The translations under genes and the position numbers were made by a program. Below the pieces are notes generated by a model. It worked only from the letters and a program-made list of their open reading frames with translations. It ran no database searches and was not told where the DNA came from. 64,000 bases of DNA, from the IMG/VR virus record IMGVR_UViG_3300046543_000266, positions 1-64,000 of that record; one strand, written 5' to 3'. Shown here one piece after another: positions 5,368-19,206 of the stretch (positions are counted from its first letter, which is position 1; each line of letters begins with the position of its first letter).

Positions 5368-5378
5368 TATGAGAAGGG

Positions 5379-5387: not shown

Positions 5388-5408
5388 CCCTGTAGCATCT
5401 GATCCTTA

Positions 5409-5425
5409 CTCCCAACGAAACGGAG
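5409..5425 (+). repeat. CTCCCAACGAAACGGAG leader cassette
   Basis: Identical 17-mer at 31938, 32684, 33375; 6 nt before ATG 5432. Confidence 0.85.
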
Positions 5426-5431
5426 CGCTTC

Positions 5432-6123: not shown

Positions 6124-6145
6124 CTTCATACCAAGGAACCACACC

Positions 6146-6475
6146 ATGTTCGCATTCAACAAGAAGGCCACCGAAATCCAAGCCGCCGTCGAATACTGCG
6201 CACCGCACTGGATCGTGGTGATCCGCAATCCGCGCGAGTCCAAGTGGACGCCGCTGCGATCGCTCACCAAGAAGGTGCGTGTGCAGGACGAGTTCGGCAA
6301 CGAGAAGTCCAGCCGTCCGGCGATCGAGAGCTTCGAATCCAAGCAGAAAGCCGATGTGTGGGTCAAGGAAAACATGCCTGGAGTCGCGCTGACGCAGCGT
6401 AGTTCGGTGGAGCGCAACAAGGATCACGAGTGGTTCGGTTCGTCGGGTCCTTCGATTAGCGGAGAAATGCAGTGA
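6146..6475 (+). CDS. hypothetical protein
   Basis: AAGGA SD before ATG 6146. Confidence 0.7.
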   Translation: MFAFNKKATEIQAAVEYCAPHWIVVIRNPRESKWTPLRSLTKKVRVQDEFGNEKSSRPAIESFESKQKADVWVKENMPGVALTQRSSVERNKDHEWFGSSGPSISGEMQ

Positions 6476-6478
6476 TCG

Positions 6479-6487
6479 TAGTAAATA
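6479..6487 (+). promoter_or_regulatory. TAGTAAATA box
   Basis: Exact motif just after stop 6475. Confidence 0.65.
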
Positions 6488-6555
6488 GACTGGCAAGCAA
6501 CGTTTCCCCCGCCACCAATTACATACCTGCATCAATCCCCTTGGACAGCGCAACC

Positions 6556-6873
6556 ATGAAGAACCTCGTTCCTCCCATTGGTACGATGGTGCCCATCCGC
6601 TCCGGTGACGCGTCGTTGTCGAAAGACGACAAGACGTATATGTGCCGCATCACGTTCGACGAATCCACGAAGACTTGGATCATCGCGTCGCGGTTCAATC
6701 AAGCAACCGGCCGGTGGGCGCCGACTACCAAACACAAACGTCTGGGCTTCATCGTGTTCCTCAACGACAAGCCGGACACCGACGATACCCATGTGCGTAT
6801 CTCGGCAATCCAGCCTTCCGGGCAGGGAGCATACGGTGACAGCATCAAGCAATCCACGGCCAGTGAGTCGTGA
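6556..6873 (+). CDS. hypothetical protein
   Basis: ATG 6556 in frame with ORF 6472..6873. Confidence 0.65.
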   Translation: MKNLVPPIGTMVPIRSGDASLSKDDKTYMCRITFDESTKTWIIASRFNQATGRWAPTTKHKRLGFIVFLNDKPDTDDTHVRISAIQPSGQGAYGDSIKQSTASES

Positions 6874-7546
6874 ACTGTCGGTGTTCCCGGCTCTCGATAT
6901 CGGTCGGCTAGCTCGATATCGGCAGTTACAGCAGCAGGTGACTGTTGCTCGCAATCGGTATTTCAAGTTTCATGCTCAGGTCTTGCAAATCGCCAACGAG
7001 TATTACGATGCGCTACCCGAAGCGGAAGTAGTTATCCGCTTGCGTCGTGAGATCCGTATGGCAAGCAAGGGCACTCCGGAGACGATGGCTGTAGACAGTA
7101 TTACGAGTGCTGGCTACGTATCGTTTGGAACTGAGCAGCTTTACAACGCAGAGGCGCATCTGGTGAAGAAGGCGTATCGTATGCTGGCTCCGATGGTTCA
7201 CCCCGATCGGTGCGGCGGCGATGTAACTCGCTTCCAGCTAGTAAATGCAGCATACCGGCTTCGCGATCTGACGTTTCTGCAGGAACTGTACATCCAGTTG
7301 GTGAAGGACAATCTGTGGTATCGCACCACGGACGAAGCCTTTGCATACCTGGAGCAGGAACTTCAGCGTCCGGCGGTGAGCACGATGTTGCTGCGCAGTC
7401 AGCCTGAGTTCACAATCGCACAGCTTCACCTGTCGGGAAACCTGGACGCAGCGCAAGCCACCGCCCGGCGCCGTATCCTGGAACTGGTCCGCACGCTCAA
7501 CAACGAGCTGGCCTACCTGCTAACGAAAACAACCCATCCCAACTAA
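6863..7546 (+). CDS. J-domain (DnaJ-like) protein
   Basis: VKKAYRMLAPMVHPDRCGGDVTRFQLVNAAY with HPD motif; GTG start inferred. Confidence 0.8.
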   Translation: MSRELSVFPALDIGRLARYRQLQQQVTVARNRYFKFHAQVLQIANEYYDALPEAEVVIRLRREIRMASKGTPETMAVDSITSAGYVSFGTEQLYNAEAHLVKKAYRMLAPMVHPDRCGGDVTRFQLVNAAYRLRDLTFLQELYIQLVKDNLWYRTTDEAFAYLEQELQRPAVSTMLLRSQPEFTIAQLHLSGNLDAAQATARRRILELVRTLNNELAYLLTKTTHPN

Positions 7547-7554
7547 GGACCATC

Positions 7555-8328
7555 ATGGCAATTCAGAAGAAAGTGAAATCGACGGTAGCAGAAAAGCCGC
7601 CGGTCAAGAAGAGCAAGACTGCAGTCGCCGCCCCCGCTCCGGCAGCGAAGAAGGGTGTCCCCGCCAAGAAGGGCTTCCCCGCGAAGAAGGTTGGTGGTCC
7701 GGCACGTAAGCGCCCGGCGACGGCACGCAAGCCGCTCGCAACGTGGCAAGCTCCCGCCGACTTCAAGCCGCACTTCATCGAGATCGGTGTGCGTACCGAC
7801 AAGGACGGGCTGCTCAGCAACGCCATCAAGGCCACGCGCTACCAAGGTCGCTACGATCCGGAAGCCGAGGACAAGAAGAAGTTCGACGTGGGTGGTTACG
7901 ACATGGCGACGCTGGTTGGCATTCAAGCGCGTCTCGCTGGTGTGACGTTCCGCGCCAACGCAGATCGCAAGTACCCGTCGGGCATCAAGGAACGCAACGC
8001 CACGGAAACGCTGAAGAAGGAAGACGGCACCAAGCGTGAAGCCCTCGTGTTCCGCGCCGCACATCGGTTGCCCGCCAACACGACGTTCCGCATCCTGCTG
8101 CGCGTCAACAAGAAGTCGGCCGACGGCACGCTGTCGATCGTGTTCAAGCATGTCGAGCAACTCGTGAAATCGGCGAAGACGGGCAACGTCTCGCCGGTTC
8201 TGCTGGACAAGAAGGATCCGGTGTACCGCGCTTTCCGCAAGGCGAACCGCATCCTCCCGGCAGCGTTCAAGAACGTGCTCATGCCGCCGAAGCGCACTCG
8301 CGGTCGCAACGTGCCTGACGAAGAGTAA
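7555..8328 (+). CDS. hypothetical protein with histone-H1-like K/A/P N-terminal tail
   Basis: 257 aa; first ~60 aa PAAKK-type repeats. Confidence 0.8.
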   Translation: MAIQKKVKSTVAEKPPVKKSKTAVAAPAPAAKKGVPAKKGFPAKKVGGPARKRPATARKPLATWQAPADFKPHFIEIGVRTDKDGLLSNAIKATRYQGRYDPEAEDKKKFDVGGYDMATLVGIQARLAGVTFRANADRKYPSGIKERNATETLKKEDGTKREALVFRAAHRLPANTTFRILLRVNKKSADGTLSIVFKHVEQLVKSAKTGNVSPVLLDKKDPVYRAFRKANRILPAAFKNVLMPPKRTRGRNVPDEE

Positions 8329-8390
8329 CTCCTCGGGCCGCAGTAAAGTAATTCGGTAACAACAAAAACCAACCCCACGAGGTTCCCAGT

Positions 8391-8951
8391 ATGTTCGTCC
8401 AGTCCCCCAAGCAGATCACCGCTCGCATCATCGTCCCTTCGCTTATCGCCGGTGCCGCCGACGAAATCATCACCGTCCAGATGGACCTCCTGCAAGATGC
8501 AAAGAAGCAGGGTGATGTCAAGTCGGCACTCCGCGTGGTAGTCGTCAACGGAACGGTGTTTGCCGCCAAGGGCGATCTCGAACCGGTGTTCGGCATGTTC
8601 GTCAGCAAGTTCGGTATCGGCAGCCGCGACGTCGAAAACGCAACGCTGAAGTTCGGCTCGCAGCTGACTCGCCTCACGGCCGAGGCCTACTATCTGCTTG
8701 GTGGCATGACGACCAAGCAATATCGTGTTTCGAAGCTCCGGCTTGCTGAGGAAATCCGCAAGGAGCGGGAGCGCGACATGAAGGCGCAGGGTGCAGGGAT
8801 GCTGCTCGATCTGATCGACGACGGGTTCATCACGGCGGCCGAAGCCAAGAAGTTGATCGACAAGCGTATCCGGGAAATCAAGCAGCAAGGCGCAGTAGCA
8901 ACAAAGCCTGCCGCCGAATCCACCGATCCGCTGTGGGACAACATCGGCTGA
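8391..8951 (+). CDS. hypothetical protein
   Basis: 186 aa ORF, strong codon bias. Confidence 0.75.
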   Translation: MFVQSPKQITARIIVPSLIAGAADEIITVQMDLLQDAKKQGDVKSALRVVVVNGTVFAAKGDLEPVFGMFVSKFGIGSRDVENATLKFGSQLTRLTAEAYYLLGGMTTKQYRVSKLRLAEEIRKERERDMKAQGAGMLLDLIDDGFITAAEAKKLIDKRIREIKQQGAVATKPAAESTDPLWDNIG

Positions 8952-9009
8952 CCGGTTTTCGAAGTGTGTTACAATACTGCCAGCCGCCGCGCACAGCATT
9001 CCCGGCGGG

Positions 9010-9054
9010 TAGTAAATACAGCACAGTAGCAAACTCCGCAGCACGTAGTAAATA
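9010..9054 (+). promoter_or_regulatory. tandem TAGTAAATA boxes
   Basis: Exact motifs at 9010-9018 and 9046-9054 upstream of 9144. Confidence 0.7.
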
Positions 9055-9143
9055 TCGTATGTACGGGGCAGTCTGTACTCGCAATCACAGACATCACAAC
9101 CAATCCAACGTTTCACCATTCTTTATCGATAAAGGAATACAAA

Positions 9144-10052
9144 ATGGCAATCCGCAACGCAGCGAAGGGCACGAAGGCAGCAGCAGGTAAGGCTAAGGCA
9201 GCTCCGGCACGCAAGACGGCAGCTCCGGCTCGCGGTCGTGGTCGCGCAGCAGCTCCGGCTCCGGCGAAGCAAGGCCCGAAGGCTCGTGCAGCAGCGGCAG
9301 CAGCGAAGGCTGAAGCTCTGGCAGCGCGCAAGGCGAAGGCTCTGGCAGCGAAGAAGAAGGCAGCAGCTCCGAAGAAGCCGGTTCGTGGCGCGAAGGCCGC
9401 TCCGGTTCGTCAAGCTCGTGGCGCGAAGGCAGTGAAGGCAGTTGCTCAGCAAGCAGTCGGCACGCAAGTGTTCATCAAGATGGTCGTGACCACGCAAGCT
9501 GGCGGCAAGCCGACCGAAGCATCGTACTTCGGCGCACAAGGCCAGATCATCCCGCGTTCGACGGTCAAGGCAGTGGTCGGCAGCGTAATCTATCACGAAG
9601 TGCTGGTCCCGATGGGCACGGTCACCGAAGTGAAGGTGCAGAAGGGCATCACGATCTACATCACGGAAAACGGCCCGGTCATCGCGCTGGACCCGGCTTC
9701 GGTGTTCACCTCGTTCGGCGGCGCATCGGCAGTGATCGCCCCGGCTGGTGACGAAGACGAAGACGGCGTCGAAGGTGACGACGAAGAAGATGAAGACGAA
9801 GACGGCGTCGAAGGTGACGACGAGGACGAAGAGTCCGACGAAGAAGAAGACGAAGACGAAGAAGAAGACGAGGACGAAGAGTCAGACGACGGCGACGAAG
9901 AAGACGAAGAGTCGGACGACGGCGACGAAGAAGACGAAGACGAAGAAGAAGACGACGGCGACGAAGAAGACGAAGAAGAAGAAGACGACGGCGACGAAGA
10001 AGACGAAGACGACGGCGACGAAGAAGACGAAGACGAAGACGAACTGTTCTAA
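9144..10052 (+). CDS. basic K/A-rich N-terminus + small beta domain + ~100 aa Asp/Glu tail
   Basis: 302 aa; AAGGA SD; tail GDEDED...EDELF encoded 9747-10049. Confidence 0.85.
   Translation: MAIRNAAKGTKAAAGKAKAAPARKTAAPARGRGRAAAPAPAKQGPKARAAAAAAKAEALAARKAKALAAKKKAAAPKKPVRGAKAAPVRQARGAKAVKAVAQQAVGTQVFIKMVVTTQAGGKPTEASYFGAQGQIIPRSTVKAVVGSVIYHEVLVPMGTVTEVKVQKGITIYITENGPVIALDPASVFTSFGGASAVIAPAGDEDEDGVEGDDEEDEDEDGVEGDDEDEESDEEEDEDEEEDEDEESDDGDEEDEESDDGDEEDEDEEEDDGDEEDEEEEDDGDEEDEDDGDEEDEDEDELF
9747..10046 (+). repeat. low-complexity GAC/GAA coding repeat
   Basis: Imperfect repeats of GACGGCGACGAAGAAGACGAA encoding polyacidic tail. Confidence 0.9.
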
Positions 10053-10079
10053 TCTTCCGGCATCGGCGGTATAGGTCAG

Positions 10080-10111
10080 GGCTGGGAGCACACAAGGGCT
10101 CCCAGCCTTTT
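10080..10111 (+). terminator. Rho-independent terminator
   Basis: GGCTGGGAGC/GCTCCCAGCC stem + TTTT. Confidence 0.85.
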
Positions 10112-10146
10112 CAGCATTTGCTGGCTGCACACAACAGAGACGTCCC

Positions 10147-10449
10147 GTGGCAAAAGAGCATCTAGCACTTTACTCTAATGACTGTAAGCGATGCCGACAT
10201 CTGGACCCGTCCGAGGCCAGAGCCTTTGCGAAGTGTCACTACAGCAAGGGTAACAAGCATTGTCCAGCGCAAGATCTGGTCATTGTAGTCGTAGGCCAAG
10301 CGTACCGTTGGGCGAATCTGGTGATTGCTGCCCGCGAGAAACGTGACGCCGCGTCTGAAGCTCGCATCCTGGCGCAGGTGGCGAAGAAACCTGCATCGTT
10401 CCAAGAACGCTTTTATTCAGCAATCGAAAATCCGGCGGACATCCGATGA
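10147..10449 (+). CDS. Cys-rich hypothetical protein
   Basis: CKRCRH..C..HC pattern, 100 aa. Confidence 0.65.
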   Translation: MAKEHLALYSNDCKRCRHLDPSEARAFAKCHYSKGNKHCPAQDLVIVVVGQAYRWANLVIAAREKRDAASEARILAQVAKKPASFQERFYSAIENPADIR

Positions 10450-11192
10450 ACAAGGCGATACCAGCGGCTACGAAACCCGCATCTAACTCTCCCACCGTAA
10501 TCCGCTTGACGAAGATCAAGCAGTGGTGGCTCCCAGTCGACGCCGAGTCCTACTTGGCTTTGCGCGAGGCCGGTGTGCCACTCGTCCGCTTTCATGTGGA
10601 CTTCCTCCCAGCGCTATCCCTCATTACGAAGAAGCATCGCATCCGTGCGAAGGAAGTATCCTTCAAGGATGAAATCCTGACGCCGTTCCTCAATCTGGTC
10701 GGCACCACCTGGAACAAGAAGCAACACTGCCGGGCAACCATCGCCGCGCGGTCCATGAAGTTCGAGACCCTGAAGCCCGAGGTCTACACGAAAGCGAAAG
10801 AGAGCATCACGAAGCTCACCGACATCCTCGAGAAGTTCTTTGTTCGGTGGGGCTTCAAATACCAGTTCGAGTACAGCGAGTCGCGCGGTAAGTGTAAATT
10901 GAATGTGGAGTACTACTTCGACAGCACCAAGATGCCGGTCATTCCTCTGGAGACCCCGGTCACTGATCTGCCGAAGGTCCAACTGAAGATCGGCTTTACG
11001 CGCATCACGATGACGTTCGGCGACCGCTATGTGGATACGCTGATCGAAGTCAGTCAGGGTGGCAAGTTCACCCCGTTGCACTCAACGCGTTGCACGTACT
11101 CGCAGATATCCTCAGTCAAACCTATGATCGCGGCACTCATGCAGGTGCCCGATCATGACATTCACAACTTCGACAACTCGGCCACCCCATGA
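10446..11192 (+). CDS. hypothetical protein
   Basis: 248 aa ORF coupled (ATGA) to neighbours. Confidence 0.75.
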   Translation: MNKAIPAATKPASNSPTVIRLTKIKQWWLPVDAESYLALREAGVPLVRFHVDFLPALSLITKKHRIRAKEVSFKDEILTPFLNLVGTTWNKKQHCRATIAARSMKFETLKPEVYTKAKESITKLTDILEKFFVRWGFKYQFEYSESRGKCKLNVEYYFDSTKMPVIPLETPVTDLPKVQLKIGFTRITMTFGDRYVDTLIEVSQGGKFTPLHSTRCTYSQISSVKPMIAALMQVPDHDIHNFDNSATP

Positions 11193-13870
11193 TTATGGCT
11201 CTCGCCAAAAAGAAAGTCGCCGCTCCGACAAAGAAGGCGGCTTCGTATTCGAGCAAGGACATCACAACCTTGCGCTTCCCGGACAACGTCCGCTCGAACC
11301 CTTCGATGTATCTTGGGTCGGTGGACGCCGCTGGTGTGTGGCTCACGGCCCGGGAATTGCTGGACAACGCGCTGGATGAGCATCTGGCGCACCGTAACGA
11401 CGCAGTCATGCTGCACGTCGATAAGGACGGCTCCTATTGGGTGCTGGATCGTGGTCACGGCGTGCCGCAGGGTGTGAAGAAGTTCAGCGTGCACGTCAAC
11501 GGCAAGGACATCGAGACGAAGATGCCCACGATGCAAGCCGTCTTCGGTGAACTGCATACGTCGGGCAAGTATCGCTCGGATGCATACGCAACCTCGGTTG
11601 GTACGCACGGCATCGGCGCCAAGGGCACCAACGCAACCTCGGAGTTCTTCGAGGTCTTCACGTTCTACGAAGGCCAGTGGTTCACCATCGGCTTCAAGAA
11701 GGGCAAGCTGGTCAAGCACGTCGCGAAGTGCAGCGCCCCGAAGGGTCCCGACGGCAAGACTGTTACCAAGGGCACGGTCATCCACTTCAAGCCGGATCCC
11801 ACGATCTTCACCGTCAAGTCCTTCCCACCCTCGATGGTGATGGAATGGGCCGACGTGATGTCGCATCTGAATCCCGGCTTCGCAATCGTCGTATCCAGCC
11901 CCAAGGGCAAGAAGCAGTTCCTGTCGAAAATCGGCCCGGCCGGTTACGTCCAGCAGCGCATCGAGAAGTTGAAGACCGAAGCTGAACGCCTGATGTTCGA
12001 GTACAAGTCGGATCTGGCGGACGTCGTGGTGGCCTTCTCGAACTATGACGGCTGCGACGTGCGCGGTTTCACGAACGGCCTGAACAATGCTCAGGGCGGC
12101 AAACATCTGGACGCTGTGACCGGCGCACTGTACGCGGGCCTCAAGCCCTACATCAAAACCAAGCGCGTGGAAGGGAAGCCGGTTCCGGTGTTCCGCGAGG
12201 CTGACTTCAAGGAAGGCTTGGTTGGTCTTGTCAACGCCAAGCTCCACAAGGCCGAGTTCAGTTCGCAGGACAAGGCACGGCTGACTGATGCTCGTATGGG
12301 TGCGGCGTTCGAGAAAGAGCTCACGCTGGCAACCATCAAGTTCTTCAAGGACAACAAGGCACTGGCACTGCGTCTGTGTGCGCGGGCCACAAAGCTCAAC
12401 GAACTGAAGACCAAGTTCACGTTGTCGAAGAAGGCTGCGTCCACGCTCAACGCTATGAAGCGCAACGGTCTGCCCGCCAAGTACGCTGGATTCGACAGCA
12501 AGACGAAGACCGAAGACCGCGAACTGTTCATCGTCGAAGGGGATTCGGCAGGTGGTACGGTCAAGAAGGGTCGCTTCCCGTATCAGGCAGTGCTGCCCCT
12601 CAAGGGCAAGATCATGAACGCGTTGAAGGATGGCAAGGGCAAGACGCTGGAGTCGGAGGAAATCCTGAACATCCTGGCGGCTATCGGCTTCGACGTCAAG
12701 GCAGTCGACCCGTATGCCAAGCTCACGGTCGGCAAGATTGTGTGTCTGGCTGACCCGGATCCGGACGGCCCCTTCATCGGCGACACCCGCATCAACTTCC
12801 GCTACAATACGCACGGCACGACGCAGTCGGCCAGCATCGAGTGCCTCGCCAAGATGGCAGCTGATGGTACGGAGTTCGTGGTTCCGGTGTGGAACGGCCA
12901 AACCGAAGTGTGGGCCAGCGCCAGCGCTCGCCTCGAACGCAACGTCGAGCAACTGGTTGCTCTCGAGATCGGCAAGACGAAGTACAAGGTCAGCGTCGAT
13001 CACAAGTGGCTGTGTGTTAAAACCGATGCGCTGCGCGGCCGCGACGTGGGCGAACATGCAGACAACCTCGTGTTCGTCAGGGCGGCTGATCTGAAGGTAG
13101 GCGACCGGGTGTTCATGCCCGCAGCTAACAACACGCGGGACAAGTCTAGCTGCGACTACGCGACGAAGCTCGGGTTCGCCCCAGTCTCGAAGATGCGCAT
13201 CCAGCAGTTGGACCAGCCGGTTCCGGTGTACTGTCTGAGCGTGCCGAAGTATCACCACTTCATGCTGCCTTCGGGTATCGTGTCGAGCAACTGCCACATC
13301 AACTCGTTGCTGCTCACGCTGTTCTACCGCTATCTGCCTGAGCTGTTCAGCCGGGGCATGGTGTTCGTTGCCAACAGCCCGGAGTTCTACAGCATCCACA
13401 AGAATCAGCTGGTGACCGGCGAGTCGCTGTCGGCAATGGGCAAGAACCTGAAGCGCATCAAGGCACCGGCCAACACGCCGATCCATCACATCAAGGGTTG
13501 GGGAGAAATCGATGCTCCGCTGATGCGCATCTTGGCAATGGACCCGGCCACGCGGAAGCTCATCAAGATTGGCGCAATCGAGCACGACGACAAGGTTGAC
13601 TTCGAGCGGCTCATGAACGACGACGTTGCCTATCGCCGTGACATGTTGGGCTTGCCGTCCAATGCCGTCGGCGGTGACGTGGAGGAGGAAGGCACTCCGA
13701 AGTCCAAGGCCGCACGTAAAGTACCTGTGAACAAAGCGGTCGTCGCAGCCAAGAAAATTGCGACAGCCAACCGGAAGATCGTTCACCGTCGCGATGAAAT
13801 CGAAGCCAAGCGCATCGAGAAGCGACGTGGCCTCCGTCCGGTGGGCAAGACGTTGCGCAAAGCCGCATAA
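11189..13870 (+). CDS. gyrB: type IIA topoisomerase ATPase/Toprim subunit (GyrB/ParE-like), intein-containing
   Basis: ELLDNALDE, DRGHG, GTHGIGAKGTNA (GHKL); IVEGDSAGG, PLKGKIMN, DPDPDG (Toprim). Confidence 0.95.
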   Translation: MIMALAKKKVAAPTKKAASYSSKDITTLRFPDNVRSNPSMYLGSVDAAGVWLTARELLDNALDEHLAHRNDAVMLHVDKDGSYWVLDRGHGVPQGVKKFSVHVNGKDIETKMPTMQAVFGELHTSGKYRSDAYATSVGTHGIGAKGTNATSEFFEVFTFYEGQWFTIGFKKGKLVKHVAKCSAPKGPDGKTVTKGTVIHFKPDPTIFTVKSFPPSMVMEWADVMSHLNPGFAIVVSSPKGKKQFLSKIGPAGYVQQRIEKLKTEAERLMFEYKSDLADVVVAFSNYDGCDVRGFTNGLNNAQGGKHLDAVTGALYAGLKPYIKTKRVEGKPVPVFREADFKEGLVGLVNAKLHKAEFSSQDKARLTDARMGAAFEKELTLATIKFFKDNKALALRLCARATKLNELKTKFTLSKKAASTLNAMKRNGLPAKYAGFDSKTKTEDRELFIVEGDSAGGTVKKGRFPYQAVLPLKGKIMNALKDGKGKTLESEEILNILAAIGFDVKAVDPYAKLTVGKIVCLADPDPDGPFIGDTRINFRYNTHGTTQSASIECLAKMAADGTEFVVPVWNGQTEVWASASARLERNVEQLVALEIGKTKYKVSVDHKWLCVKTDALRGRDVGEHADNLVFVRAADLKVGDRVFMPAANNTRDKSSCDYATKLGFAPVSKMRIQQLDQPVPVYCLSVPKYHHFMLPSGIVSSNCHINSLLLTLFYRYLPELFSRGMVFVANSPEFYSIHKNQLVTGESLSAMGKNLKRIKAPANTPIHHIKGWGEIDAPLMRILAMDPATRKLIKIGAIEHDDKVDFERLMNDDVAYRRDMLGLPSNAVGGDVEEEGTPKSKAARKVPVNKAVVAAKKIATANRKIVHRRDEIEAKRIEKRRGLRPVGKTLRKAA
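12770..13291 (+). mobile_element. 174 aa mini-intein, class-3-like, Pro at position 1
   Basis: Inserted between DPDPDG and CHINSLLL; PFIGDT..SVDHKWL..VYCLSV..HHF..GIVSSN|C; no LAGLIDADG motifs. Confidence 0.85.
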
Positions 13871-13879
13871 GGAATCGAC

Positions 13880-15463
13880 ATGGTAATCAAAAGACGAGTA
13901 GCGAAGCCCGAAGCCGACGATATGGACTTCGACAAACCCGCACCGCGCACACGGGCTCCGGCCCGTCGTGGCAAAGCGCCGGTCAAGCGGGTTCTGAAGG
14001 GTACTGAGGACAAGCACGTCGATAACGAAAGCATCCGTAGCTTCGGCAAGCGCAACATGACCACGTATGCTGTGGCGGTCAACCTCGATCGCAGCGTGCC
14101 TGACATGTACGACGGGTGGAAGCCTGTGCATCGCCGCATCATCTGGGCGGCTTCCACTCAGGCTCGCGACCTAACCAAGACGGCGCGGGTCGTGGGCGAT
14201 ACGCTTGGCAAGTATCACCCCCACGGTGACCGCAGCGTGGCCGACGCCATCGAGACGATGGTCAACATGCCTACTGCTCCGCTTTTGGGCAAGGGCAATT
14301 GGGGATCGATGATCGACAGCGCGGCAGCCATGCGATACACCAACATGAAGCTGTCGGCGTATGGCCTCACGTTCCTGAACCCGCACTACATCCACTCGGA
14401 AGTCACGTCGTTCGTACCCAACTACGACGACAAGGACGTGGAGCCGGTCACGCTTCCGGCGCAGTTGCCGAACGTGCTGATCAACGGCTCCGAGGGTATC
14501 GGCGTTGGCATTACCACTGGCTTGCCGTCGTTCACGCCTGAGTCGATGATCAGTGTGCTGGAGAGCATGCTCAAGGGTGAGAAGCTGAAGGCCGTCGACT
14601 TCGCGAAGCGCCTGAAGTTCGCTCACAAGTGGGGCGGGCAGATCGTCCAGTCGAAGGAGAACCGCTTATCAATGATGGGCATCTTCAACGGCAGCGTCGG
14701 CACTGTACAGTTCGAGTCGGCCATCGAAGTGGATCGTGACCGCAAGAGCATGACCATCGGCGACTGGCCTCCAGGCACTAACCTCGAGAAGTTCGTGGCG
14801 CGTGTCCGGGCCATGCCTGAATGTCAGCGCTGCTATAACAGCGAAGGCGTCACCAACTTCACGATCGAGTGCAAGCCCGCCTACAACTATGTGCAGTTCG
14901 ACAAGTTCGTTGAGAAGGTTCAGGCGGCGACTCGGCAGAAGCGCAACTACAAGATCAACGTAACGCAGCGTGTCGCCAACGATAACGACGGCGTCATTAG
15001 CTTCGAGACCAAGTTCTTGGCGCTGTCGGTGCCTGAGCTGATCTTGCAGTGGTTGCGTATGCGCCTCCAGTTGGAACTGAAAAGTCTGACGTTCCGGATC
15101 AAGAAGCAGGAAGCAGCCATCGCCTACTCCGAGCTCCTGATCTACGCGTGCGACAAACTGGATCTGATCTTCAAGGCGATTCGTAGCAGCGACCCGAAAG
15201 CCGCGATGGTAAAGCTGCTGAAGATCACCGAGGAGCAAGCCAAGCAAATCCTGGAGTTGCGCTTGTCACAACTCACGCGCATGGATCAAAGCGCGATGAA
15301 GGAAAAGCTGGCCGAGCAACGCAGTCATCACAAGCAACTGCTCGTGTGGCAGAAGAAGCCTCGCAGCAAGGTGCTTCTCGATCTCGAAGATGTCCGAGCC
15401 GCAATCGACAAGGACCGGAAGTTCGAAAACACCAAGGAAGAGCAGTCGCTTACGGTGGTGTAA
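13880..15463 (+). CDS. gyrA: type IIA topoisomerase breakage-reunion subunit (GyrA/ParC-like), no CTD pinwheel
   Basis: DGWKPVHRRI, KTARVVGDTLGKYHPHGD, AAMRYT (Tyr 14336-14338); only 527 aa. Confidence 0.95.
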   Translation: MVIKRRVAKPEADDMDFDKPAPRTRAPARRGKAPVKRVLKGTEDKHVDNESIRSFGKRNMTTYAVAVNLDRSVPDMYDGWKPVHRRIIWAASTQARDLTKTARVVGDTLGKYHPHGDRSVADAIETMVNMPTAPLLGKGNWGSMIDSAAAMRYTNMKLSAYGLTFLNPHYIHSEVTSFVPNYDDKDVEPVTLPAQLPNVLINGSEGIGVGITTGLPSFTPESMISVLESMLKGEKLKAVDFAKRLKFAHKWGGQIVQSKENRLSMMGIFNGSVGTVQFESAIEVDRDRKSMTIGDWPPGTNLEKFVARVRAMPECQRCYNSEGVTNFTIECKPAYNYVQFDKFVEKVQAATRQKRNYKINVTQRVANDNDGVISFETKFLALSVPELILQWLRMRLQLELKSLTFRIKKQEAAIAYSELLIYACDKLDLIFKAIRSSDPKAAMVKLLKITEEQAKQILELRLSQLTRMDQSAMKEKLAEQRSHHKQLLVWQKKPRSKVLLDLEDVRAAIDKDRKFENTKEEQSLTVV

Positions 15464-15492
15464 CCGCCTCGCGTCACTGCCGGGTTTTCGGT

Positions 15493-15535
15493 GTTGCAAA
15501 AACGCAACAGAGCGGTTCGCGCGGTGTGGTACAAT
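15493..15535 (+). promoter_or_regulatory. palindrome + extended -10 promoter
   Basis: GTTGCAAAAACGCAAC 15493-15508, 21 nt, then TGgTACAAT (15530-15535); ACGTGC/GCACGT hairpin follows. Confidence 0.75.
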
Positions 15536-15666
15536 ATGGTACGTGCCGCGCGCACGTCGTGCAGGGTTTTGGCCGGTTTTACCCGCACGGTGCAAAAGCA
15601 CAAAATCGGCAAGTAGGTCTACCCGCTCGCGGGTTCGTAGTTCATCCAAACCACAGGAGCAGCACA

Positions 15667-16038
15667 ATGCCAGCACTCGCACACTTCCAGGTAGCGAAAA
15701 CCGTCTACGATCTGGTAGACAAACGTACCAAGGCGGGAGATCCGCCAAACCGTCGGGAGCTCATGGCTGAACTCCGCCCCGTACTCAGTCTTCTGGGCCG
15801 GGCGGAATCTACCGCGCAGCAAATGCTCGATGTTCTCATGCGCATCGGCGCAATCGAGCGCGACGTCAGCCGGTACTATCAGACGGTGCGGGAAATCGAT
15901 CTCGCGAAGTTTGCGACTGCAGTCGATCGCAACAACAAACGGCGCAAGATGCTGATCTCGTATCAGGAACTCCCGGTTCCGGCCGGTGCCGCCGAGTGGG
16001 TCGAAGAATCCGACTTCGCGGAATCGACGGCTCTGTAA
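15667..16038 (+). CDS. hypothetical, possible winged-helix DNA-binding protein
   Basis: AGGAG SD; PPNRRELMAEL..AQQMLDVLMRIGAIER pattern (weak). Confidence 0.6.
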   Translation: MPALAHFQVAKTVYDLVDKRTKAGDPPNRRELMAELRPVLSLLGRAESTAQQMLDVLMRIGAIERDVSRYYQTVREIDLAKFATAVDRNNKRRKMLISYQELPVPAGAAEWVEESDFAESTAL

Positions 16039-16116
16039 CAACCCACGCATCACACGGGCTTCGCCGGGCTCCCGCATCCAACGTCCGGCACATTCCACAA
16101 CAGGAAACGTATCATC

Positions 16117-17397
16117 ATGGCTAAGGCACAAATCGCAGCATCCTCCAAGTCCAACGCAGCAGCAGCCAAGAAGGCGACGGCGAAGAAAGCATTCGCAGCC
16201 AAGAAGGTAGCGCCGAAGGCAAAAGTCGGCGCATCGGCCCGCAGTGGTAACGCAAAGCGTGGTGCCGAGCAGCGCGTCAAGGTAAGCCAGGATGCTGTGA
16301 AGGCATTCGCGTTCCCGACTCGCAAGTCGATGAAAGCGCTCGCCAAGACTCTGACTGTCGGCACTGTGGTTGGTGAAAAGGGTGGTCAGGAGCGCGTCGG
16401 TATGGTCCACGCTGTACCGGGAAGCGGCTCCACGATCCCGACAGGCACGGTCGGCGTCATCTGGGACGAGGGCAAAGGCGTGGAAGTCTACGCGGTCGGA
16501 ATGCTGGAAGTCGTGAAGAACCCGAGCAAGCTCCTGAAGGCGGATATCGGCACCGCCATCGAACAGAACCGCGAGTACGCGAAGCTCGCCAAGAAGTACA
16601 CACTCGGTGCCGAAGTGCAAGAGCTTCAGGAACCCAAGCGTCACGGCATCGTGCAAGCGGTCGCGGCGAAAGGCAGTGGTTACGTGACTGTGCAGTTCGG
16701 TATCGCAGTCGAGGCCAAGCATGTAGGCGACCTCAAGCTGTTGGGCCAGCATCAAGCGCTTCTGGCCCCGACGACTTCGGCTCCGGTTGTCCACACCGCA
16801 TGGGAAGTCGGCACCCGCGTTGAGCATCCGACACACGGATTGGGTGTCGTGGCTATCAGCGCAGAAGGTATGCCCGACGACGTCGCCACCGTCCACTTCG
16901 ATGACGGTGATCAAGTGGCGAAGGAAATCGCAGCCAGCGAACTGAAAGTGATCAACGATACGTTTGCAGTTGGCGAGATCGTCGAGCACGCGGAACACGG
17001 TATGGGTCGCATCGAGACGCTGCATCCCAACGCCACTACCGCAGCGGTTCGTTTCCTGGACGCTGACGTGGTTGTTACGCGCAAGCTCAGCGAATTGCAT
17101 TCGCTCAAGGACGCAGAGATCACCATCGAGCGCGCCGCCGATGCCGCAGTCACGCCGGTCTCGAAGGTCAAGCGCGTCCGCTTCGATGAGCTCGGGCTGT
17201 TCGAAGCGTTCGTCCACGAAGACCGCACGCATGTCAAGGTCGGCAACACTAGCGCGCTCCGCGTTGTCGTCGCCGGAATCACGAGCGAGCCGTTCGCAAT
17301 GCTGGCAACCCAGGAATCGAAACTGGTGAAGGATGCCAAGGTGCGCTTCCGTCTGAAAGACAAGGTCGCCCGTTACGCAGTTCACGCCGCGCAGTAA
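16117..17397 (+). CDS. K/A-rich tail + tandem SH3/Tudor-like repeat protein
   Basis: Repeats VGTRVEHPTHGLGVV..ATVHF and VGEIVEHAEHGMGRI..AVRF, plus two weaker copies. Confidence 0.75.
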   Translation: MAKAQIAASSKSNAAAAKKATAKKAFAAKKVAPKAKVGASARSGNAKRGAEQRVKVSQDAVKAFAFPTRKSMKALAKTLTVGTVVGEKGGQERVGMVHAVPGSGSTIPTGTVGVIWDEGKGVEVYAVGMLEVVKNPSKLLKADIGTAIEQNREYAKLAKKYTLGAEVQELQEPKRHGIVQAVAAKGSGYVTVQFGIAVEAKHVGDLKLLGQHQALLAPTTSAPVVHTAWEVGTRVEHPTHGLGVVAISAEGMPDDVATVHFDDGDQVAKEIAASELKVINDTFAVGEIVEHAEHGMGRIETLHPNATTAAVRFLDADVVVTRKLSELHSLKDAEITIERAADAAVTPVSKVKRVRFDELGLFEAFVHEDRTHVKVGNTSALRVVVAGITSEPFAMLATQESKLVKDAKVRFRLKDKVARYAVHAAQ

Positions 17398-17466
17398 ATA
17401 GCAGGTAAGTCGGGGCGGGTGTGTTCTGCCCGTTCCCGCAATCAGTAATTTGAAGTTCCACTCTCG

Positions 17467-17475
17467 TAGTAAATA
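17467..17475 (+). promoter_or_regulatory. TAGTAAATA box
   Basis: Exact motif upstream of 17549; variant CAGTAAATA at 17392-17400. Confidence 0.65.
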
Positions 17476-17548
17476 AACGGTGTGCCACAAACCACACAGC
17501 ACAACGTCTTCTGTATTATCAACCTTTCCCAATCAAGGAATACAAATC

Positions 17549-18034
17549 ATGGCAACGCAAATCAACGCAGTTCAAGCAGCTCGCTCGGTCGCACAAACGG
17601 TCGCTCAACTCACGCGCAAAGTTGCACAGCAAGAAAAGCTGATCGCTCGTCTGCAAGCGAAGGGCAACGGCGCGGCGAAGCCGGTTCGTGCAGCAAAGGG
17701 TCCGAAGGCTGCTCCGGCTGCGAAGAAGGCTGGCAAGATCGTGCGCGAAGCGCGTGAAGGTCGCGGCGCAGCGAAGAACGTGAAGGTCAACGCGAAGGCG
17801 GCTGGTCGTGCTGGCAAGGCATCGGCAGAAGACGACGAAGACGCTCCGGTTGCGAAGCGCGTGAAGGTCGCTGGCAAGGCTGGTCGCGTGGTGAAGGGTC
17901 CGAAGGCTGTCGCAGGCAAGCAAGGTCCGGTCGCGAAGAAGCAAGCAGCGGGCAAGGGTCCGAAGGCTGCTCCGGCGAAGGCTGGCAAGCCGGTCAAGGC
18001 TGCGAAGAAGGGCGGCGACGACTTCCTGCTGTAA
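17549..18034 (+). CDS. histone-H1-like basic protein with N-terminal coiled coil
   Basis: AAGGA SD; KGPKAAPAKAGKP repeats; ends GGDDFLL. Confidence 0.8.
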   Translation: MATQINAVQAARSVAQTVAQLTRKVAQQEKLIARLQAKGNGAAKPVRAAKGPKAAPAAKKAGKIVREAREGRGAAKNVKVNAKAAGRAGKASAEDDEDAPVAKRVKVAGKAGRVVKGPKAVAGKQGPVAKKQAAGKGPKAAPAKAGKPVKAAKKGGDDFLL

Positions 18035-18084: not shown

Positions 18085-18130
18085 GAAGGGCGAAACGCGA
18101 ATTCCGAATCCCGGTTGCGTTTCGCCCTTC
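18085..18130 (+). terminator. long hairpin (terminator or RNase III-type processing site)
   Basis: 14-bp perfect stem GAAGGGCGAAACGC/GCGTTTCGCCCTTC; weak T tract. Confidence 0.55.
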
Positions 18131-18192
18131 TGCCGTTTCGGCACTGCGCGAATTTAATGGGGTCGCCCAGAATTCACGCCACGGAGATAACT

Positions 18193-19206
18193 GTGAAAAA
18201 CGTACAGCGCGTAGCAGATACAAACTTTGATCGCTTCCAGGCCAAGCAAGGTCTGACTGCGAAGAACCAGTCGCAAATGACGAAACTCCTGCCGATGTTG
18301 CAGGTTGGTAGCAAGGCCGGACCTGACGACGCACAGGTCCTCGCTAAGATGGAAGCACGGCTCACCGCGCTCAAAGAATTGCGGGCATCGTTGCACAAGA
18401 CGACGATCTCCCTAGCCAAGCTCCACATAGTAGACAAGGAGCAACAGCTGAAGAAACTCACGATCGCACGCAAGAAGGTGGTGGCGATCGCCGAATCGAA
18501 ACCGCCGGTCGGCGTGTCCAAAGCATTGCGCGCATGTCTGAACGAACTGACGTCGCTGCGCGAGGGTGTGTACGTCGGCACCGCCACTACCCGCAAGACG
18601 CTGGCAATCGTGGCGTGCAGCGATGCTGTCGAGCATGTCGATGGTCTGATCGCCAAGACGACGAAGCGCCTCGAAGCTGCGAAGTCGCAGACGCAAGCTG
18701 GCTCCGGCGATCCGGTGTTCCAGGACGAAGTGGTGAAGGTCATCCAGCGCACGGCCGAAGACGCACACAAGCTGGAGTCGCTGAAGGGCAAGTCGTTCGT
18801 CGTGTGTCGCGTCCCGGTGGTTGCTGTCGCGAAGACGATGCTCGACGCCAACAAGTTGAAAGCCAAGGGCTTCAAGGCCGAAGACATCGGCGGGTATCCG
18901 GTCCTGCACAATCAGCTGGTGATCGGTATCAACAAGGCGATGCTCAACCTCAAGAAGAACGAGATGGACGAGCAAGGTAACAGCCTCAAGCCACTGAGCA
19001 CCGACCGTTGGGTCAACGCCGCCGATCAAGTGCTGGCGATGATCCGCAAGCAGACGAAGGTCAAGTATCAGCTGGTGGATGCGCGTCCGTACGGACATGC
19101 TGGTGGTGCGTGGTTCTGGGCGATGCCGGAACGTGATCTGAATCTGTTTGCTACGTCGTTCCCGGGCAAGGCAGTTTCCCTGCAATCGTGGGGCTTCGGC
19201 TTCTAA
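18193..19206 (+). CDS. hypothetical protein
   Basis: GGAG SD before GTG 18193; long ORF. Confidence 0.75.
   Translation: MKNVQRVADTNFDRFQAKQGLTAKNQSQMTKLLPMLQVGSKAGPDDAQVLAKMEARLTALKELRASLHKTTISLAKLHIVDKEQQLKKLTIARKKVVAIAESKPPVGVSKALRACLNELTSLREGVYVGTATTRKTLAIVACSDAVEHVDGLIAKTTKRLEAAKSQTQAGSGDPVFQDEVVKVIQRTAEDAHKLESLKGKSFVVCRVPVVAVAKTMLDANKLKAKGFKAEDIGGYPVLHNQLVIGINKAMLNLKKNEMDEQGNSLKPLSTDRWVNAADQVLAMIRKQTKVKYQLVDARPYGHAGGAWFWAMPERDLNLFATSFPGKAVSLQSWGFGF

What the first reader, a model, noticed from the sequence alone, without database searches (positions are those of the whole stretch)
7555..18034. Cluster of histone-H1-like, polyacidic and basic-tailed proteins around the topoisomerases: a possible phage chromatin/condensate module
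Seen in sequence: 7555, 9144, 16117 and 17549 all carry long Lys/Ala/Pro low-complexity tails (PAAKK, KGPKAAP). GyrB has basic extensions at both ends (MALAKKKVAAPTKKAA..; ..KAARKVPVNKAVVAAKK..RKAA) and GyrA has a basic N-tail, which is atypical of these enzymes. Similar tails occur on 18 and 38110. 9144 adds a ~100 aa D/E tail. 9144 and 17549 share the leader AAGGAATACAAA and upstream TAGTAAATA boxes. A J-domain protein precedes the block. Established: H1-like proteins (Chlamydia Hc1/Hc2, Pseudomonas AlgP) compact DNA, and polyacidic tracts characterise nucleoplasmin-type histone chaperones. Inference: the phage may build a shell-less DNA factory or condensate in which basic tails act as partition tags and the acidic protein as chaperone.
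Basis: partly seen in the sequence, partly recalled or inferred. Interest (0 to 1): 0.75.

Follow-up and report, generated by a model that had tools for sequence, protein, structure and literature searches.

The report
DNA-tethering tails around phage topoisomerase
A gene block conserved in a whole clade of giant soil phages surrounds the phage topoisomerase with proteins carrying floppy, positively charged DNA-gripping tails, one of which also has a long negatively charged tail. This looks like an undescribed phage "chromatin" kit switched on together with the DNA-replication genes.

Summary
The window is the first 64 kb of a 217.6-kb rhizosphere jumbo phage related to Ralstonia phage RSL1. 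ORFs 7555, 9144, 16117 and 17549 and both topoisomerase II subunits carry basic Lys/Ala/Pro-rich tails. ORF 9144 also has a 109-residue tail with 84 Asp/Glu.

The block is a conserved module: J-domain protein, g7555, g9144, a four-cysteine protein, g10446, the two topo II subunits, a multi-Tudor-like protein, g17549, g18115. It recurs in RSL1, BcepSauron, Motura and metagenomic relatives.

Tail sequence drifts but charge is kept: 112 g7555 homologues have a median tail of 56 aa and +14. In lower-GC relatives the K/A/P tails of the g9144 and g17549 families are replaced by AT-hooks. This is the same swap known for myxobacterial CarD, and it argues for DNA binding.

About 30 g9144 relatives keep a small beta-barrel, a polyacidic tail and an acidic-aromatic C-terminal tip. 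The phage's SSB and UvsX-like recombinase carry similar tails.

A promoter-like box, [TC]AGTAAATA, precedes g9144, g17549, SSB, UvsX, DNA polymerase and helicases.

Best reading: replication-phase, DNA-tethered architectural proteins of H1/HMGA type. The condensate and "partition tag" idea is neither tested nor excluded. I rate it a new variant of a known kind.

The parts
6863..7546 (+). J-domain (DnaJ-like) protein; the start codon is uncertain (ORF open from 6578)
   Evidence: PF00226 E=4e-6, 27.2 bits, HPD motif. Homologues sit at the same position in L003, BcepSauron gp174 and L017.
7555..8328 (+). g7555: basic disordered N-tail (aa 1-68, +17) plus a conserved, basic alpha/beta domain of unknown fold
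   Evidence: More than 226 homologues. 112 tails have a median of 56 aa and +14. AF2 gives core pLDDT >90 and tail about 50-58. No PDB match. Invariant Arg/Lys residues in the core.
8391..8951 (+). g8391: a non-conserved ORF between g7555 and g9144, with no tail
   Evidence: No tblastn match in RSL1 or L003. No Pfam or PHROG hit.
9010..9054 (+). Two TAGTAAATA promoter-like boxes (9010-9018 and 9046-9054) upstream of g9144
   Evidence: The GTAAATA box is also upstream of g9144 homologues in RSL1, L003 (3 tandem copies), BcepSauron and Motura.
9132..9143 (+). Shared Shine-Dalgarno/leader AAGGAATACAAA of g9144
9144..10052 (+). g9144: basic K/A/P N-tail (aa 1-103, +27, with one RGRGR), small beta-barrel core (aa about 106-190), polyacidic tail (aa 194-302, -84) ending in ...DELF
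10147..10449 (+). Conserved small four-cysteine protein (zinc-ribbon-like by eye)
   Evidence: Syntenic homologues in RSL1 ORF330, L003, BcepSauron gp171 and L017.
10446..11192 (+). Conserved 248-aa protein of unknown function
   Evidence: 50-57% identity to RSL1 ORF331 and L003.
11189..13870 (+). Topoisomerase II large subunit (GHKL ATPase + Toprim). Basic N-tail aa 3-26, basic C-tail aa 835-893, and a 174-aa intein-like insert at aa 528-701 (nt 12770-13291).
   Evidence: Pfam DNA_gyraseB, Toprim, DNA_gyraseB_C and a weak Intein_splicing hit. Tails. Insert boundaries.
13880..15463 (+). Topoisomerase II medium subunit (GyrA/ParC-like) with a basic N-tail (aa 1-47)
   Evidence: PF00521 E=4e-72. 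Tail.
16117..17397 (+). g16117: basic K/A N-tail (aa 5-55, +13) followed by about four Tudor/SH3-like repeats and a conserved C-terminal domain
   Evidence: Sub-threshold CarD_TRCF_RID and PcrA_UvrD_tudor hits. Language-model neighbours are DUF3553 and the RapA Tudor domain. The C-terminus matches RSL1 ORF341. The L017 counterpart has a faint RID hit.
17392..17475 (+). Two boxes (CAGTAAATA at 17392-17400 and TAGTAAATA at 17467-17475) upstream of g17549
17535..17546 (+). Shared leader AAGGAATACAAA of g17549
17549..18034 (+). g17549: N-terminal coiled-coil-like helix (about 45 aa), a long K/A/P/G basic region (net +28 overall) and a C-terminal tip GGDDFLL
   Evidence: Homologues: RSL1 ORF342, L003, BcepSauron gp166, Motura gp329, L017.
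18115..19206 (+). g18115: a conserved protein that closes the syntenic block
   Evidence: 50% identity to L003. Counterparts are BcepSauron gp165 and Motura gp328.

Best explanation
The region is a conserved 'DNA-architecture' module built around the two-subunit topoisomerase II of RSL1-type jumbo phages, which do not form a phage nucleus.

The basic tails: the Lys/Ala/Pro-rich tails are intrinsically disordered polycations that bind DNA non-specifically. They are functionally equivalent to the C-terminal domain of histone H1 and to HMGA AT-hooks. They tether their proteins to DNA during the replication phase.

Proposed roles of the parts (inferred):
- g17549 is a coiled-coil (probably dimeric) H1/HMGA-like protein that coats or bridges DNA.
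- g9144 is an HMGA/HMGB-like or CarD-like architectural factor. Its basic region binds DNA. Its roughly 100-residue polyacidic tail acts as a DNA-like counter-ion that competes with DNA for its own and other proteins' basic tails. Its acidic-aromatic tip docks on a partner, as SSB C-terminal tips do.
- g7555 and g16117 are DNA-tethered proteins of unknown activity.
- On the topoisomerase, SSB and UvsX-like recombinase the tails raise local DNA affinity or processivity.

Shown: the composition, the conservation of charge, the AT-hook substitution, the synteny, and the shared box with replisome genes.

Inferred: DNA binding itself, the roles of the acidic tail and its tip, and the timing of expression.
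For: 1. Synteny. The same gene order is found in RSL1, L003, BcepSauron, Motura and L017.

2. Selection on charge, not sequence. 112 g7555-family tails have a median of 56 aa and net +14, and none is negative. Composition tracks GC content: K/A/P in GC-rich genomes, K/S/E in AT-rich ones.

3. AT-hook substitution. In L003 (39% GC) and L017 (51% GC), both the g9144 and the g17549 homologues carry AT-hooks instead of K/A/P. Pfam AT_hook scores are 22.9, 17.4 and 16.8 bits against a cut-off of 17.4. The same interchange is functionally equivalent in myxobacterial CarD (PMC9304148, PMC4374960).

4. g9144 family. About 30 members all have a small barrel and a polyacidic tail (net -25 to -76). 27 of 30 have an aromatic residue in the last 6 residues, against about 21% expected. 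Where the N-tail is missing, basic islands or AT-hooks sit inside the acidic tail.

5. Disorder. AF2 pLDDT for the g7555 tail is about 50-58 with no secondary structure.

6. The same device on known DNA enzymes. The SSB (phrog_15004) has a block-polyampholyte tail and the UvsX/RecA-like protein has a K/A/P N-tail. Both are conserved in RSL1 and Motura, and the Motura SSB ends in DDDIPF.

7. Co-regulation. The [TC]AGTAAATA box has 28 sites (I estimate about 1.3 by chance), all oriented towards the next ORF on their own strand. It precedes g9144 (twice), g17549 (twice), SSB, UvsX, DNA polymerase, DnaB-like helicase and a 1577-aa helicase. The box is kept before the homologues in four other phages.

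8. Precedent. Lysine repeats on Streptomyces TopA stabilise the DNA complex and raise processivity (PMC5714199). PAKKA motifs tether PhaM to the nucleoid in Cupriavidus necator (PMC9049629).
Against: - There is no direct evidence of DNA binding. Polycationic tails could also bind RNA, polyphosphate or acidic proteins.
- The topoisomerase tails are not conserved across the clade.
- The folds of the g7555 and g9144 cores give no functional clue (best Z 5.6 and 4.6).
- The temporal class is inferred only from which genes follow the box. From memory, the box also resembles the T4 late promoter TATAAATA, and structural genes were not annotated here.
- No RNA data exist for this phage.
- The complex prediction for g7555 with g9144 gave no answer.
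Confidence: 0.6

Rival explanations
1. Condensate model. The polycationic tails, the polyanionic g9144 tail and the block-polyampholyte SSB tail drive complex coacervation with DNA. This would form a membrane-less, shell-less replication compartment, with the basic tails acting as partition tags and g9144 as a chaperone or regulator of the condensate.
For: - The charge-block architecture is extreme and conserved. g9144 carries +27 and -84. The SSB tail alternates acidic and basic blocks in the window phage, RSL1 and Motura.
- The tails sit on several replication and recombination enzymes.
- The clade lies far from the nucleus-forming phages (Matilda preprint).
- Shell-less phage replication zones and phase separation during phage infection have precedents (PMC10066036, PMC13401047; abstracts seen).
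Against: - No test of phase behaviour is possible with these tools.
- The topoisomerase tails are missing in Motura, L003 and L017, so they are not a universal tag.
- All the data are equally explained by simple DNA tethering.
Confidence: 0.2
2. Host-takeover model. The H1-like proteins compact or silence the host nucleoid, as Hc1 does when expressed in E. coli. The polyacidic tail of g9144 would act as a DNA mimic that sequesters host nucleoid proteins or DNA-targeting defence enzymes.
For: - The composition resembles Hc1 and H1.
- The acidic tails carry aromatic residues. From memory, the acidic tails of T7 gp2.5 and bacterial SSB compete with DNA for DNA-binding surfaces.
- An Hc1-like protein has been reported in another lineage of large aquatic phages, with host shut-off discussed (PMC12619734).
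Against: - The genes share their box with replication genes rather than looking like immediate-early takeover genes.
- The same tails sit on the phage's own topoisomerase, SSB and UvsX, which act on phage DNA.
- There is no Pfam Hc1 or HC2 match.
Confidence: 0.15
3. CarD-like transcription factor model. g9144 and/or g16117 use their Tudor-like barrels to bind the beta subunit of host RNA polymerase and their basic tails to bind DNA. This would redirect the host enzyme to phage promoters.
For: - The architecture (small Tudor-like barrel, acidic segment, AT-hooks or an H1-like region) equals that of M. xanthus CarD (PMC4374960, PMC9304148).
- g16117 scores 22.1 bits on CarD_TRCF_RID against a cut-off of 23. 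The L017 counterpart has a faint RID hit.
- PcrA/UvrD Tudor domains are among the best structural matches of the g9144 core.
- RSL1 has no RNA polymerase of its own and is rifampicin-sensitive (PMC5468394).
Against: - All the matches are below threshold (Z <= 4.6).
- Small barrels are ubiquitous.
- No covarying partner has been identified.
Confidence: 0.15
4. Virion internal proteins. The basic proteins are packaged with the DNA to neutralise its charge or are injected with it.
For: - From memory, basic low-complexity proteins are known as internal head proteins in other phages.
- The box resembles the T4 late promoter (from memory).
Against: - The genes lie inside the replication and topoisomerase block.
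- They share the box with DNA polymerase, helicases, SSB and UvsX.
- A protein with net charge -56 (g9144) is an unlikely partner for packaged DNA.
- No published virion proteome of RSL1 could be read here.
Confidence: 0.07
5. Neutral low-complexity drift. The tails are a by-product of GC-rich composition and have no function.
For: The amino-acid make-up of the tails tracks genome GC content.
Against: - Positive charge and tail presence are kept in more than 100 homologues across 39-59% GC.
- Conserved motif islands (TPLEKARLARA, KKGFPAKK) and conserved C-terminal tips exist.
- AT-hooks are specific motifs.
Confidence: 0.03

Closest known systems
Myxococcus xanthus CarD and its orthologues (RNAP-interacting Tudor-like domain, acidic segment, HMGA AT-hooks or a K/A/P H1-like region)
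   Same: - A small beta-barrel is combined with an acidic stretch and a disordered basic DNA-binding region.
- Orthologues interchange AT-hooks and K/A/P H1-like tails (PMC9304148), exactly as seen between the window phage, RSL1, BcepSauron and Motura on one side and L003 and L017 on the other.
   Different: - There is no significant sequence or structural match to CarD_TRCF_RID.
- The domain order differs in most members: basic, barrel, acidic.
- The acidic tail is far longer and ends in an aromatic tip.
- The proteins are phage-encoded and linked to topoisomerase II, with no CarG partner.
Eukaryotic HMGA and HMGB1
   Same: HMGA combines AT-hooks with an acidic C-terminal tail (PMC4482583 abstract). 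From memory, HMGB1's acidic tail folds back on its basic regions and interacts with the H1 tail. That is the proposed mode of action for the g9144 tail.
   Different: g9144 has a folded small barrel and no HMG box. The window copy has K/A/P plus a single RGRGR, not canonical GRP hooks. Its acidic tail is three or more times longer.
Histone H1 C-terminal domain, and bacterial H1-like proteins (Chlamydia Hc1/Hc2, Pseudomonas AlgP, PhaM/PhaF)
   Same: K/A/P-rich disordered polycations that bind DNA non-specifically. PhaM uses PAKKA motifs to tether cargo to the nucleoid in Cupriavidus necator (formerly Ralstonia eutropha), a relative of the likely hosts (PMC9049629).
   Different: There is no H1 winged-helix globular domain and no Pfam Hc1 or HC2 match. 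The similarity is compositional and analogous, not homologous.
Actinobacterial topoisomerase I with C-terminal lysine repeats
   Same: A basic repeat tail on a topoisomerase stabilises the enzyme-DNA complex and confers processivity (PMC5714199).
   Different: That enzyme is type IA. Here the enzyme is a phage type IIA with tails at the N and C ends, and the tails are only lineage-specific.
SSB C-terminal tip (DDDIPF) and the T7 gp2.5 / T4 gp32 acidic tails
   Same: An acidic disordered tail ending in an aromatic or hydrophobic tip. The Motura SSB of this clade ends in DDDIPF, and the window phage's SSB tail carries four DDF motifs. The tips of g9144 (DELF) and g17549 (DDFLL) look alike.
   Different: g9144 and g17549 have no OB fold and are not the SSB, which lies at 168530-170068. 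No binding partner for the tips has been identified.
Nucleoplasmin-type histone chaperones
   Same: Long polyacidic tracts next to basic partners.
   Different: No nucleoplasmin pentamer fold appears among the structural matches. No chaperone activity can be tested here.

Membership tests
Linker histone H1 | Winged-helix globular domain (Pfam Linker_histone) | tested here: not met
   No Pfam hit at E<=0.01 for g7555, g9144, g16117 or g17549, nor at E<=10 for g9144 and g17549.
Linker histone H1 | K/A/P-rich disordered basic C-terminal domain | tested here: met
   K+A+P is 55-68% of the tails, with net +13 to +27. pLDDT is about 50-58 for the g7555 tail.
Chlamydial Hc1/Hc2 | Sequence match to Pfam Hc1 (PF07432) or HC2 (PF07382) | tested here: not met
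   Neither family is listed in the hmmscan output.
HMGA | Repeated AT-hook (R-G-R-P core) motifs | tested here: inconclusive
   The window proteins have K/A/P plus one RGRGR and give no Pfam AT_hook hit. Relatives do: P0149 22.9 bits, the L003 g17549 homologue 17.4, the L003 g9144 homologue 16.8 (cut-off 17.4). L017 has 3-4 hooks by eye.
HMGA | Acidic C-terminal tail; protein otherwise unfolded | tested here: inconclusive
   The acidic tail is present (-84). However, g9144 has a confidently folded barrel (pLDDT 88.7).
CarD / CarD_CdnL_TRCF | CarD_TRCF_RID Tudor-like domain (PF02559) above threshold | tested here: inconclusive
   g16117 scores 22.1 bits against a cut-off of 23 and matches only part of the model. 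The g9144 core gives no Pfam hit. Structural matches to Tudor domains reach Z <= 4.6.
CarD / CarD_CdnL_TRCF | Binding to the RNA polymerase beta subunit | not testable with these tools
   Needs pull-down or two-hybrid experiments.
Nucleoplasmin | Pentameric beta-sandwich core domain | tested here: not met
   No nucleoplasmin appears among the best 50 Foldseek or VIA matches. The matches are SH3, Tudor and Sm barrels.
Bacterial or phage SSB | OB fold or SSB family match | tested here: not met
   There is no PF00436 or PF08804 match in the genome. The phage SSB (phrog_15004) is a different gene, at 168530-170068.
Bacterial or phage SSB | Acidic tail with a hydrophobic or aromatic C-terminal tip | tested here: met
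   27 of 30 g9144-family members have F/Y/W in the last 6 residues. g17549-family tips are DDFLL, DDFLI, GFFI, YDLL, DYLL, ADFLL and DDFLL; Motura gp329 instead has the F seven residues from the end (...DDDDSFTLGN).
Phage two-subunit type IIA topoisomerase | GHKL/GyrB, Toprim and GyrA/ParC breakage-reunion domains | tested here: met
   PF00204 2.5e-17, PF01751 9.4e-8, PF00521 3.7e-72.
J-domain proteins | DnaJ domain with an HPD motif | tested here: inconclusive
   PF00226 scores 27.2 bits against a cut-off of 27.8, E=4e-6. HPD is present.

The most novel reading that the evidence does not exclude
RSL1-type jumbo phages, which lack a chimallin shell, organise replication in a protein-DNA coacervate built from three parts. 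The first is polycationic tails (H1-like or AT-hook) on topoisomerase II, UvsX and several dedicated proteins. The second is the polyanionic, DNA-mimicking tail of g9144. The third is the block-polyampholyte SSB tail. The SSB-like acidic-aromatic tips of g9144 and g17549 would then serve as docking sites that recruit replication and repair enzymes onto double-stranded phage chromatin. This would be a second, shell-less solution to the problem solved by the phage nucleus.
Probability: 0.17. Interest if true: 0.85.

Novelty: new variant of a known kind. Interest (0 to 1): 0.6.

Why it matters
How jumbo phages that do not build a protein-shelled nucleus organise, protect and process a genome of more than 200 kb is largely unknown. 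This module is conserved across at least five phage lineages of Burkholderiales hosts and hundreds of metagenomic relatives. It gives concrete, testable candidates for phage-encoded chromatin proteins.

It also offers a second natural example, after CarD, in which H1-like tails and AT-hooks interchange. It provides two new protein families, g7555 and g9144, with confidently predicted folds that match no solved structure clearly.

RSL1 and BcepSauron are cultured phages of a plant pathogen and of the B. cepacia complex, so experiments are feasible. The two jumbo-phage reviews that could be read do not mention histone-like, AT-hook or condensate features for this clade.

Tried and rejected
- Pfam and PHROGs on the cluster proteins: only the topoisomerase and J-domain were recognised.
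- g7555 as a Whirly-type SSB (a language-model lead): rejected. There is no Pfam Whirly match, no structural match, and the real SSB lies elsewhere.
- g9144 as the phage SSB or an OB-fold protein: rejected for the same reason. Its core is an SH3/Tudor-like barrel with only weak matches.
- A sliding clamp as partner for the C-terminal tips: no beta-clamp or gp45 family was detected, so this could not be pursued.
- Complex prediction of g7555 with g9144 (aa 98-302): score 0.01, 'no answer'. This is not evidence either way.
- RNA evidence for expression and transcription starts: only DNA runs from rhizosphere metagenomes hold the phage.
- Per-gene expression or virion data: the RSL1 genome paper (Yamada 2010), the CarD domain-swap paper (PMC2726384) and the viral chromatin-protein review (PMC3243496) are not held. 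The Matilda preprint gives no per-gene values in its main text.
- The third near-match of the leader, at 31796, lies inside a coding region and was dropped.

Full report
**What the window is.** It is the first 64 kb of a 217,605-bp virus record with direct terminal repeats, rated complete. Near-identical DNA is present in at least ten rhizosphere metagenomes. The closest cultured relative is Ralstonia jumbo phage RSL1, but only the topoisomerase genes reach 73% DNA identity. Protein-level synteny with RSL1 runs from about 5.4 kb to 17.4 kb of the window.

**Observation check.**
- g7555 has a 68-residue N-tail (+17).
- g9144 has a 103-residue N-tail (+27) and a 109-residue C-tail with 84 Asp/Glu.
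- g16117 has a 51-residue N-tail (+13).
- g17549 is basic over about 130 of its 161 residues.
- The topoisomerase II large subunit is basic at both ends, and the medium subunit at its N end.
- The leader AAGGAATACAAA occurs exactly twice, in front of g9144 and g17549, and TAGTAAATA boxes lie upstream of both.
- The preceding ORF is a J-domain protein.
- A six-frame scan finds K/A/P windows at only 11 loci in the genome, five of them inside this 10.5-kb stretch (scan p about 0.009). Composition-shuffled proteomes give almost none.

**A conserved module.** The same gene order recurs in RSL1, in the metagenomic relative L003 at 39% GC, in Burkholderia phage BcepSauron, in Achromobacter phage Motura, and in the distant contig L017 at 51% GC. 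The order is: J-domain protein, g7555 family, g9144 family, a small four-cysteine protein, g10446 family, the two topoisomerase II subunits, a protein with Tudor-like repeats, g17549 family, g18115 family. In Motura the annotated DnaJ-like gene lies several kilobases upstream rather than adjacent. g8391 is not conserved.

**The tails are selected for charge.** The g7555 core has more than 226 homologues, many on contigs of 180-240 kb. In 112 of them the segment before the conserved P-x-D-F-K-P anchor has a median length of 56 residues and a median net charge of +14, and it is never negative. The sequence is not conserved and the composition follows GC content: K/A/P in GC-rich genomes, K/S/E in AT-rich ones. 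Two short motif islands recur, TPLEKARLARA and KKGFPAKK; the window copy has the second. AlphaFold models the core at pLDDT above 90 and the tail at about 50-58 without secondary structure.

**AT-hooks replace K/A/P.** In L003 and L017 the homologues of both g9144 and g17549 carry repeated R-G-R-P hooks instead of K/A/P runs. In L003 the two proteins even share the same 22-residue unit. Pfam AT_hook scores at or near its cut-off of 17.4 bits: 22.9, 17.4 and 16.8. AT-hooks bind the DNA minor groove. The same interchange between AT-hooks and a K/A/P H1-like region is documented among orthologues of the myxobacterial regulator CarD (PMC9304148; architecture in PMC4374960). [quoted passage not shown] This is the strongest argument here that the tails are DNA-binding devices.

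**The g9144 family.**
- A profile of the core, searched against 1.84 billion representative proteins, returns about 26 true members. With the window copy, RSL1, BcepSauron and Motura this makes 30.
- All have an all-beta core of about 90 residues followed by a polyacidic tail (net -25 to -76).
- 27 of 30 have an aromatic residue within the last six positions (ELF, LEF, DLF, EMF, DFEF, SFDF and similar). About 21% would be expected from composition.
- The basic part is usually N-terminal. Where it is missing, basic islands or AT-hooks are embedded in the acidic tail (P0126, P0128, P0130, P0139, P0147; also BcepSauron gp172). The three ingredients are therefore kept while their order is shuffled.
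- The core model (pLDDT 88.7) resembles small SH3/Tudor/Sm barrels only weakly. The best matches are the FlgD Tudor domain, the PcrA/UvrD Tudor domain and Hfq, with Z no higher than 4.6. No Pfam or PDB sequence match exists.

**The other families.**
- g17549 homologues have an N-terminal helix with weak coiled-coil matches, a long basic region, and tips DDFLL, DDFLI, GFFI, YDLL, DYLL, ADFLL and DDFLL. Motura gp329 instead has the aromatic residue seven residues from the end (...DDDDSFTLGN). In this genome only g9144 and g17549 end in an acidic-Phe-hydrophobic tip.
- The g7555 core is strongly basic, with invariant Arg/Lys residues. It has no convincing structural neighbour.
- g16117 contains about four Tudor/SH3-like repeats, with sub-threshold hits to CarD_TRCF_RID and PcrA_UvrD_tudor.

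**Topoisomerase tails are lineage-specific.** They are long in the window phage, RSL1 and BcepSauron. They are absent or very short in L003, L017 and on the Motura large subunit.

**Genome-wide context.**
- The phage's SSB (phrog_15004, E=7e-77; 168530-170068, minus strand) ends in a 250-residue tail. In it, acidic blocks alternate with PAPKKGAKK-type basic islands, and there are four DDF motifs.
- The adjacent UvsX/RecA-like recombinase has a K/A/P N-tail.
- Both features are conserved in RSL1 and Motura, and the Motura SSB ends in DDDIPF, the classical bacterial SSB tip.
- The box [TC]AGTAAATA occurs 28 times (I estimate about 1.3 by chance), always pointing towards the next ORF on its own strand. 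It precedes g9144 (twice), g17549 (twice), SSB, UvsX, DNA polymerase, a DnaB-like helicase, a 1577-residue helicase and a MazG-like enzyme.
- The GTAAATA core is kept in front of the g9144, g17549 and SSB homologues in RSL1, L003 (three tandem copies), BcepSauron and Motura.
- RSL1 has no RNA polymerase and is rifampicin-sensitive (PMC5468394). A sigma-factor gene sits two genes upstream of the SSB in RSL1 and Motura, and there is a weak Sigma70_r2 hit at the same place in this genome.
- I infer a replication-class regulon read by host polymerase, possibly with the phage sigma factor.

**Mechanism proposed.** The tails are disordered polycations that tether proteins to DNA. g17549 coats or bridges DNA. 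g9144 binds DNA through its basic region, while its polyacidic tail competes with DNA for basic tails, as in HMGB1-like autoinhibition and exchange, and its tip docks on a partner as SSB tips do. On topoisomerase II, SSB and UvsX the tails raise DNA affinity or processivity, as lysine repeats do for Streptomyces TopA (PMC5714199). Shown: composition, conservation, the AT-hook swap, synteny and the shared box. Inferred: binding, timing, and the roles of the tail and tip.

**Rivals.**
- The condensate model is compatible with the charge-block architecture and with the clade's distance from nucleus-forming phages. It is untested, and the non-universal topoisomerase tails argue against obligatory 'partition tags'.
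- Host nucleoid takeover or DNA mimicry is possible.
- A CarD-like role on host RNA polymerase is also possible.
- Packaging into virions is made less likely by the regulon and by the net charge of g9144 (-56).
- Neutral drift is contradicted by the conservation data.

**Comparison and novelty.** These proteins work like H1, HMGA and CarD-type DNA-binding tails, but they are not members of the H1, Hc1/Hc2, nucleoplasmin or SSB families; the defining domains were tested and not met. CarD membership is inconclusive. An Hc1-like gene has been noted in another phage lineage (PMC12619734). I found no description of this multi-gene module, of the g7555 and g9144 families, or of tails on phage topoisomerase II, SSB and UvsX in the two jumbo-phage reviews I could read (PMC7824862, PMC13282480). 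I therefore rate it a new variant of a known kind, with interest about 0.6.

Noticed in passing
window 12770-13291 (topo II large subunit aa 528-701): A 174-residue insert sits between the Toprim DPDPDG motif and CHINSLLL. It gives a weak Intein_splicing hit (18.2 bits against a cut-off of 35.8), ends in ...SSN followed by Cys, and begins with Pro rather than Cys/Ser/Ala. It could be an atypical or degenerate intein. It is conserved in RSL1 and L003 and absent from Motura (672 aa).
   Followed up: partly
L003:5010-8146: The L003 large-subunit gene carries an additional canonical-looking intein (EGDSAGG|CFLG...VVHN|S). It is split into two ORFs (5010-6680 and 6857-8146), so it may be a broken or split intein.
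   Followed up: no
L001:8750-9605 (RSL1 ORF328 + ORF329): In the RSL1 record the g9144 homologue is annotated as two ORFs, with a frame break inside the conserved core. This is either a sequencing error or a genuine frameshift.
   Followed up: partly
genome 168530-170068 (-) = L008:8531-10069: The SSB (phrog_15004) has a 250-residue block-polyampholyte tail: acidic blocks alternate with PAPKKGAKK-type islands, and there are four DDF motifs. RSL1 ORF222 and Motura gp037 have the same kind of tail, and the Motura one ends in DDDIPF like bacterial SSB.
   Followed up: yes
genome 166864-168417 (-) = L008:6865-8418: The UvsX/RecA-like recombinase (PF00154, phrog_97) has a K/A/P basic N-tail. The tail is also basic in RSL1 and Motura.
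   Followed up: yes
genome-wide; in the window at 5379, 6479, 9010, 9046, 17392, 17467, 19788, 25697, 28517, 59229: The [TC]AGTAAATA box has 28 copies, all on the same strand as the next downstream ORF. It marks a regulon that includes DNA polymerase, helicases, SSB and UvsX. It is probably a phage promoter element.
   Followed up: partly
genome 170729-170848 (-) = L014: A weak Sigma70_r2 match (16.2 bits) lies in a 326-aa ORF just upstream of the SSB. RSL1 ORF224 and Motura gp034 are annotated as sigma factors at the equivalent position.
   Followed up: partly
window 24-101 and genome 217502-217579: The start of g18, including its basic tail, is repeated at the end of the record. This fits the direct terminal repeat or a circularly permuted assembly.
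   Followed up: no
genome 85544-85999 (+) = L009:1545-2000: A 151-aa ORF has a short K/A-rich stretch followed by an acidic tail, a miniature of the g9144 charge layout. No family hit was found.
   Followed up: no
g7555 and g9144 families: Many members of both unrelated families begin with the same N-terminal pattern, M-A-I-x-K-K. The cause could be composition or a shared signal.
   Followed up: no
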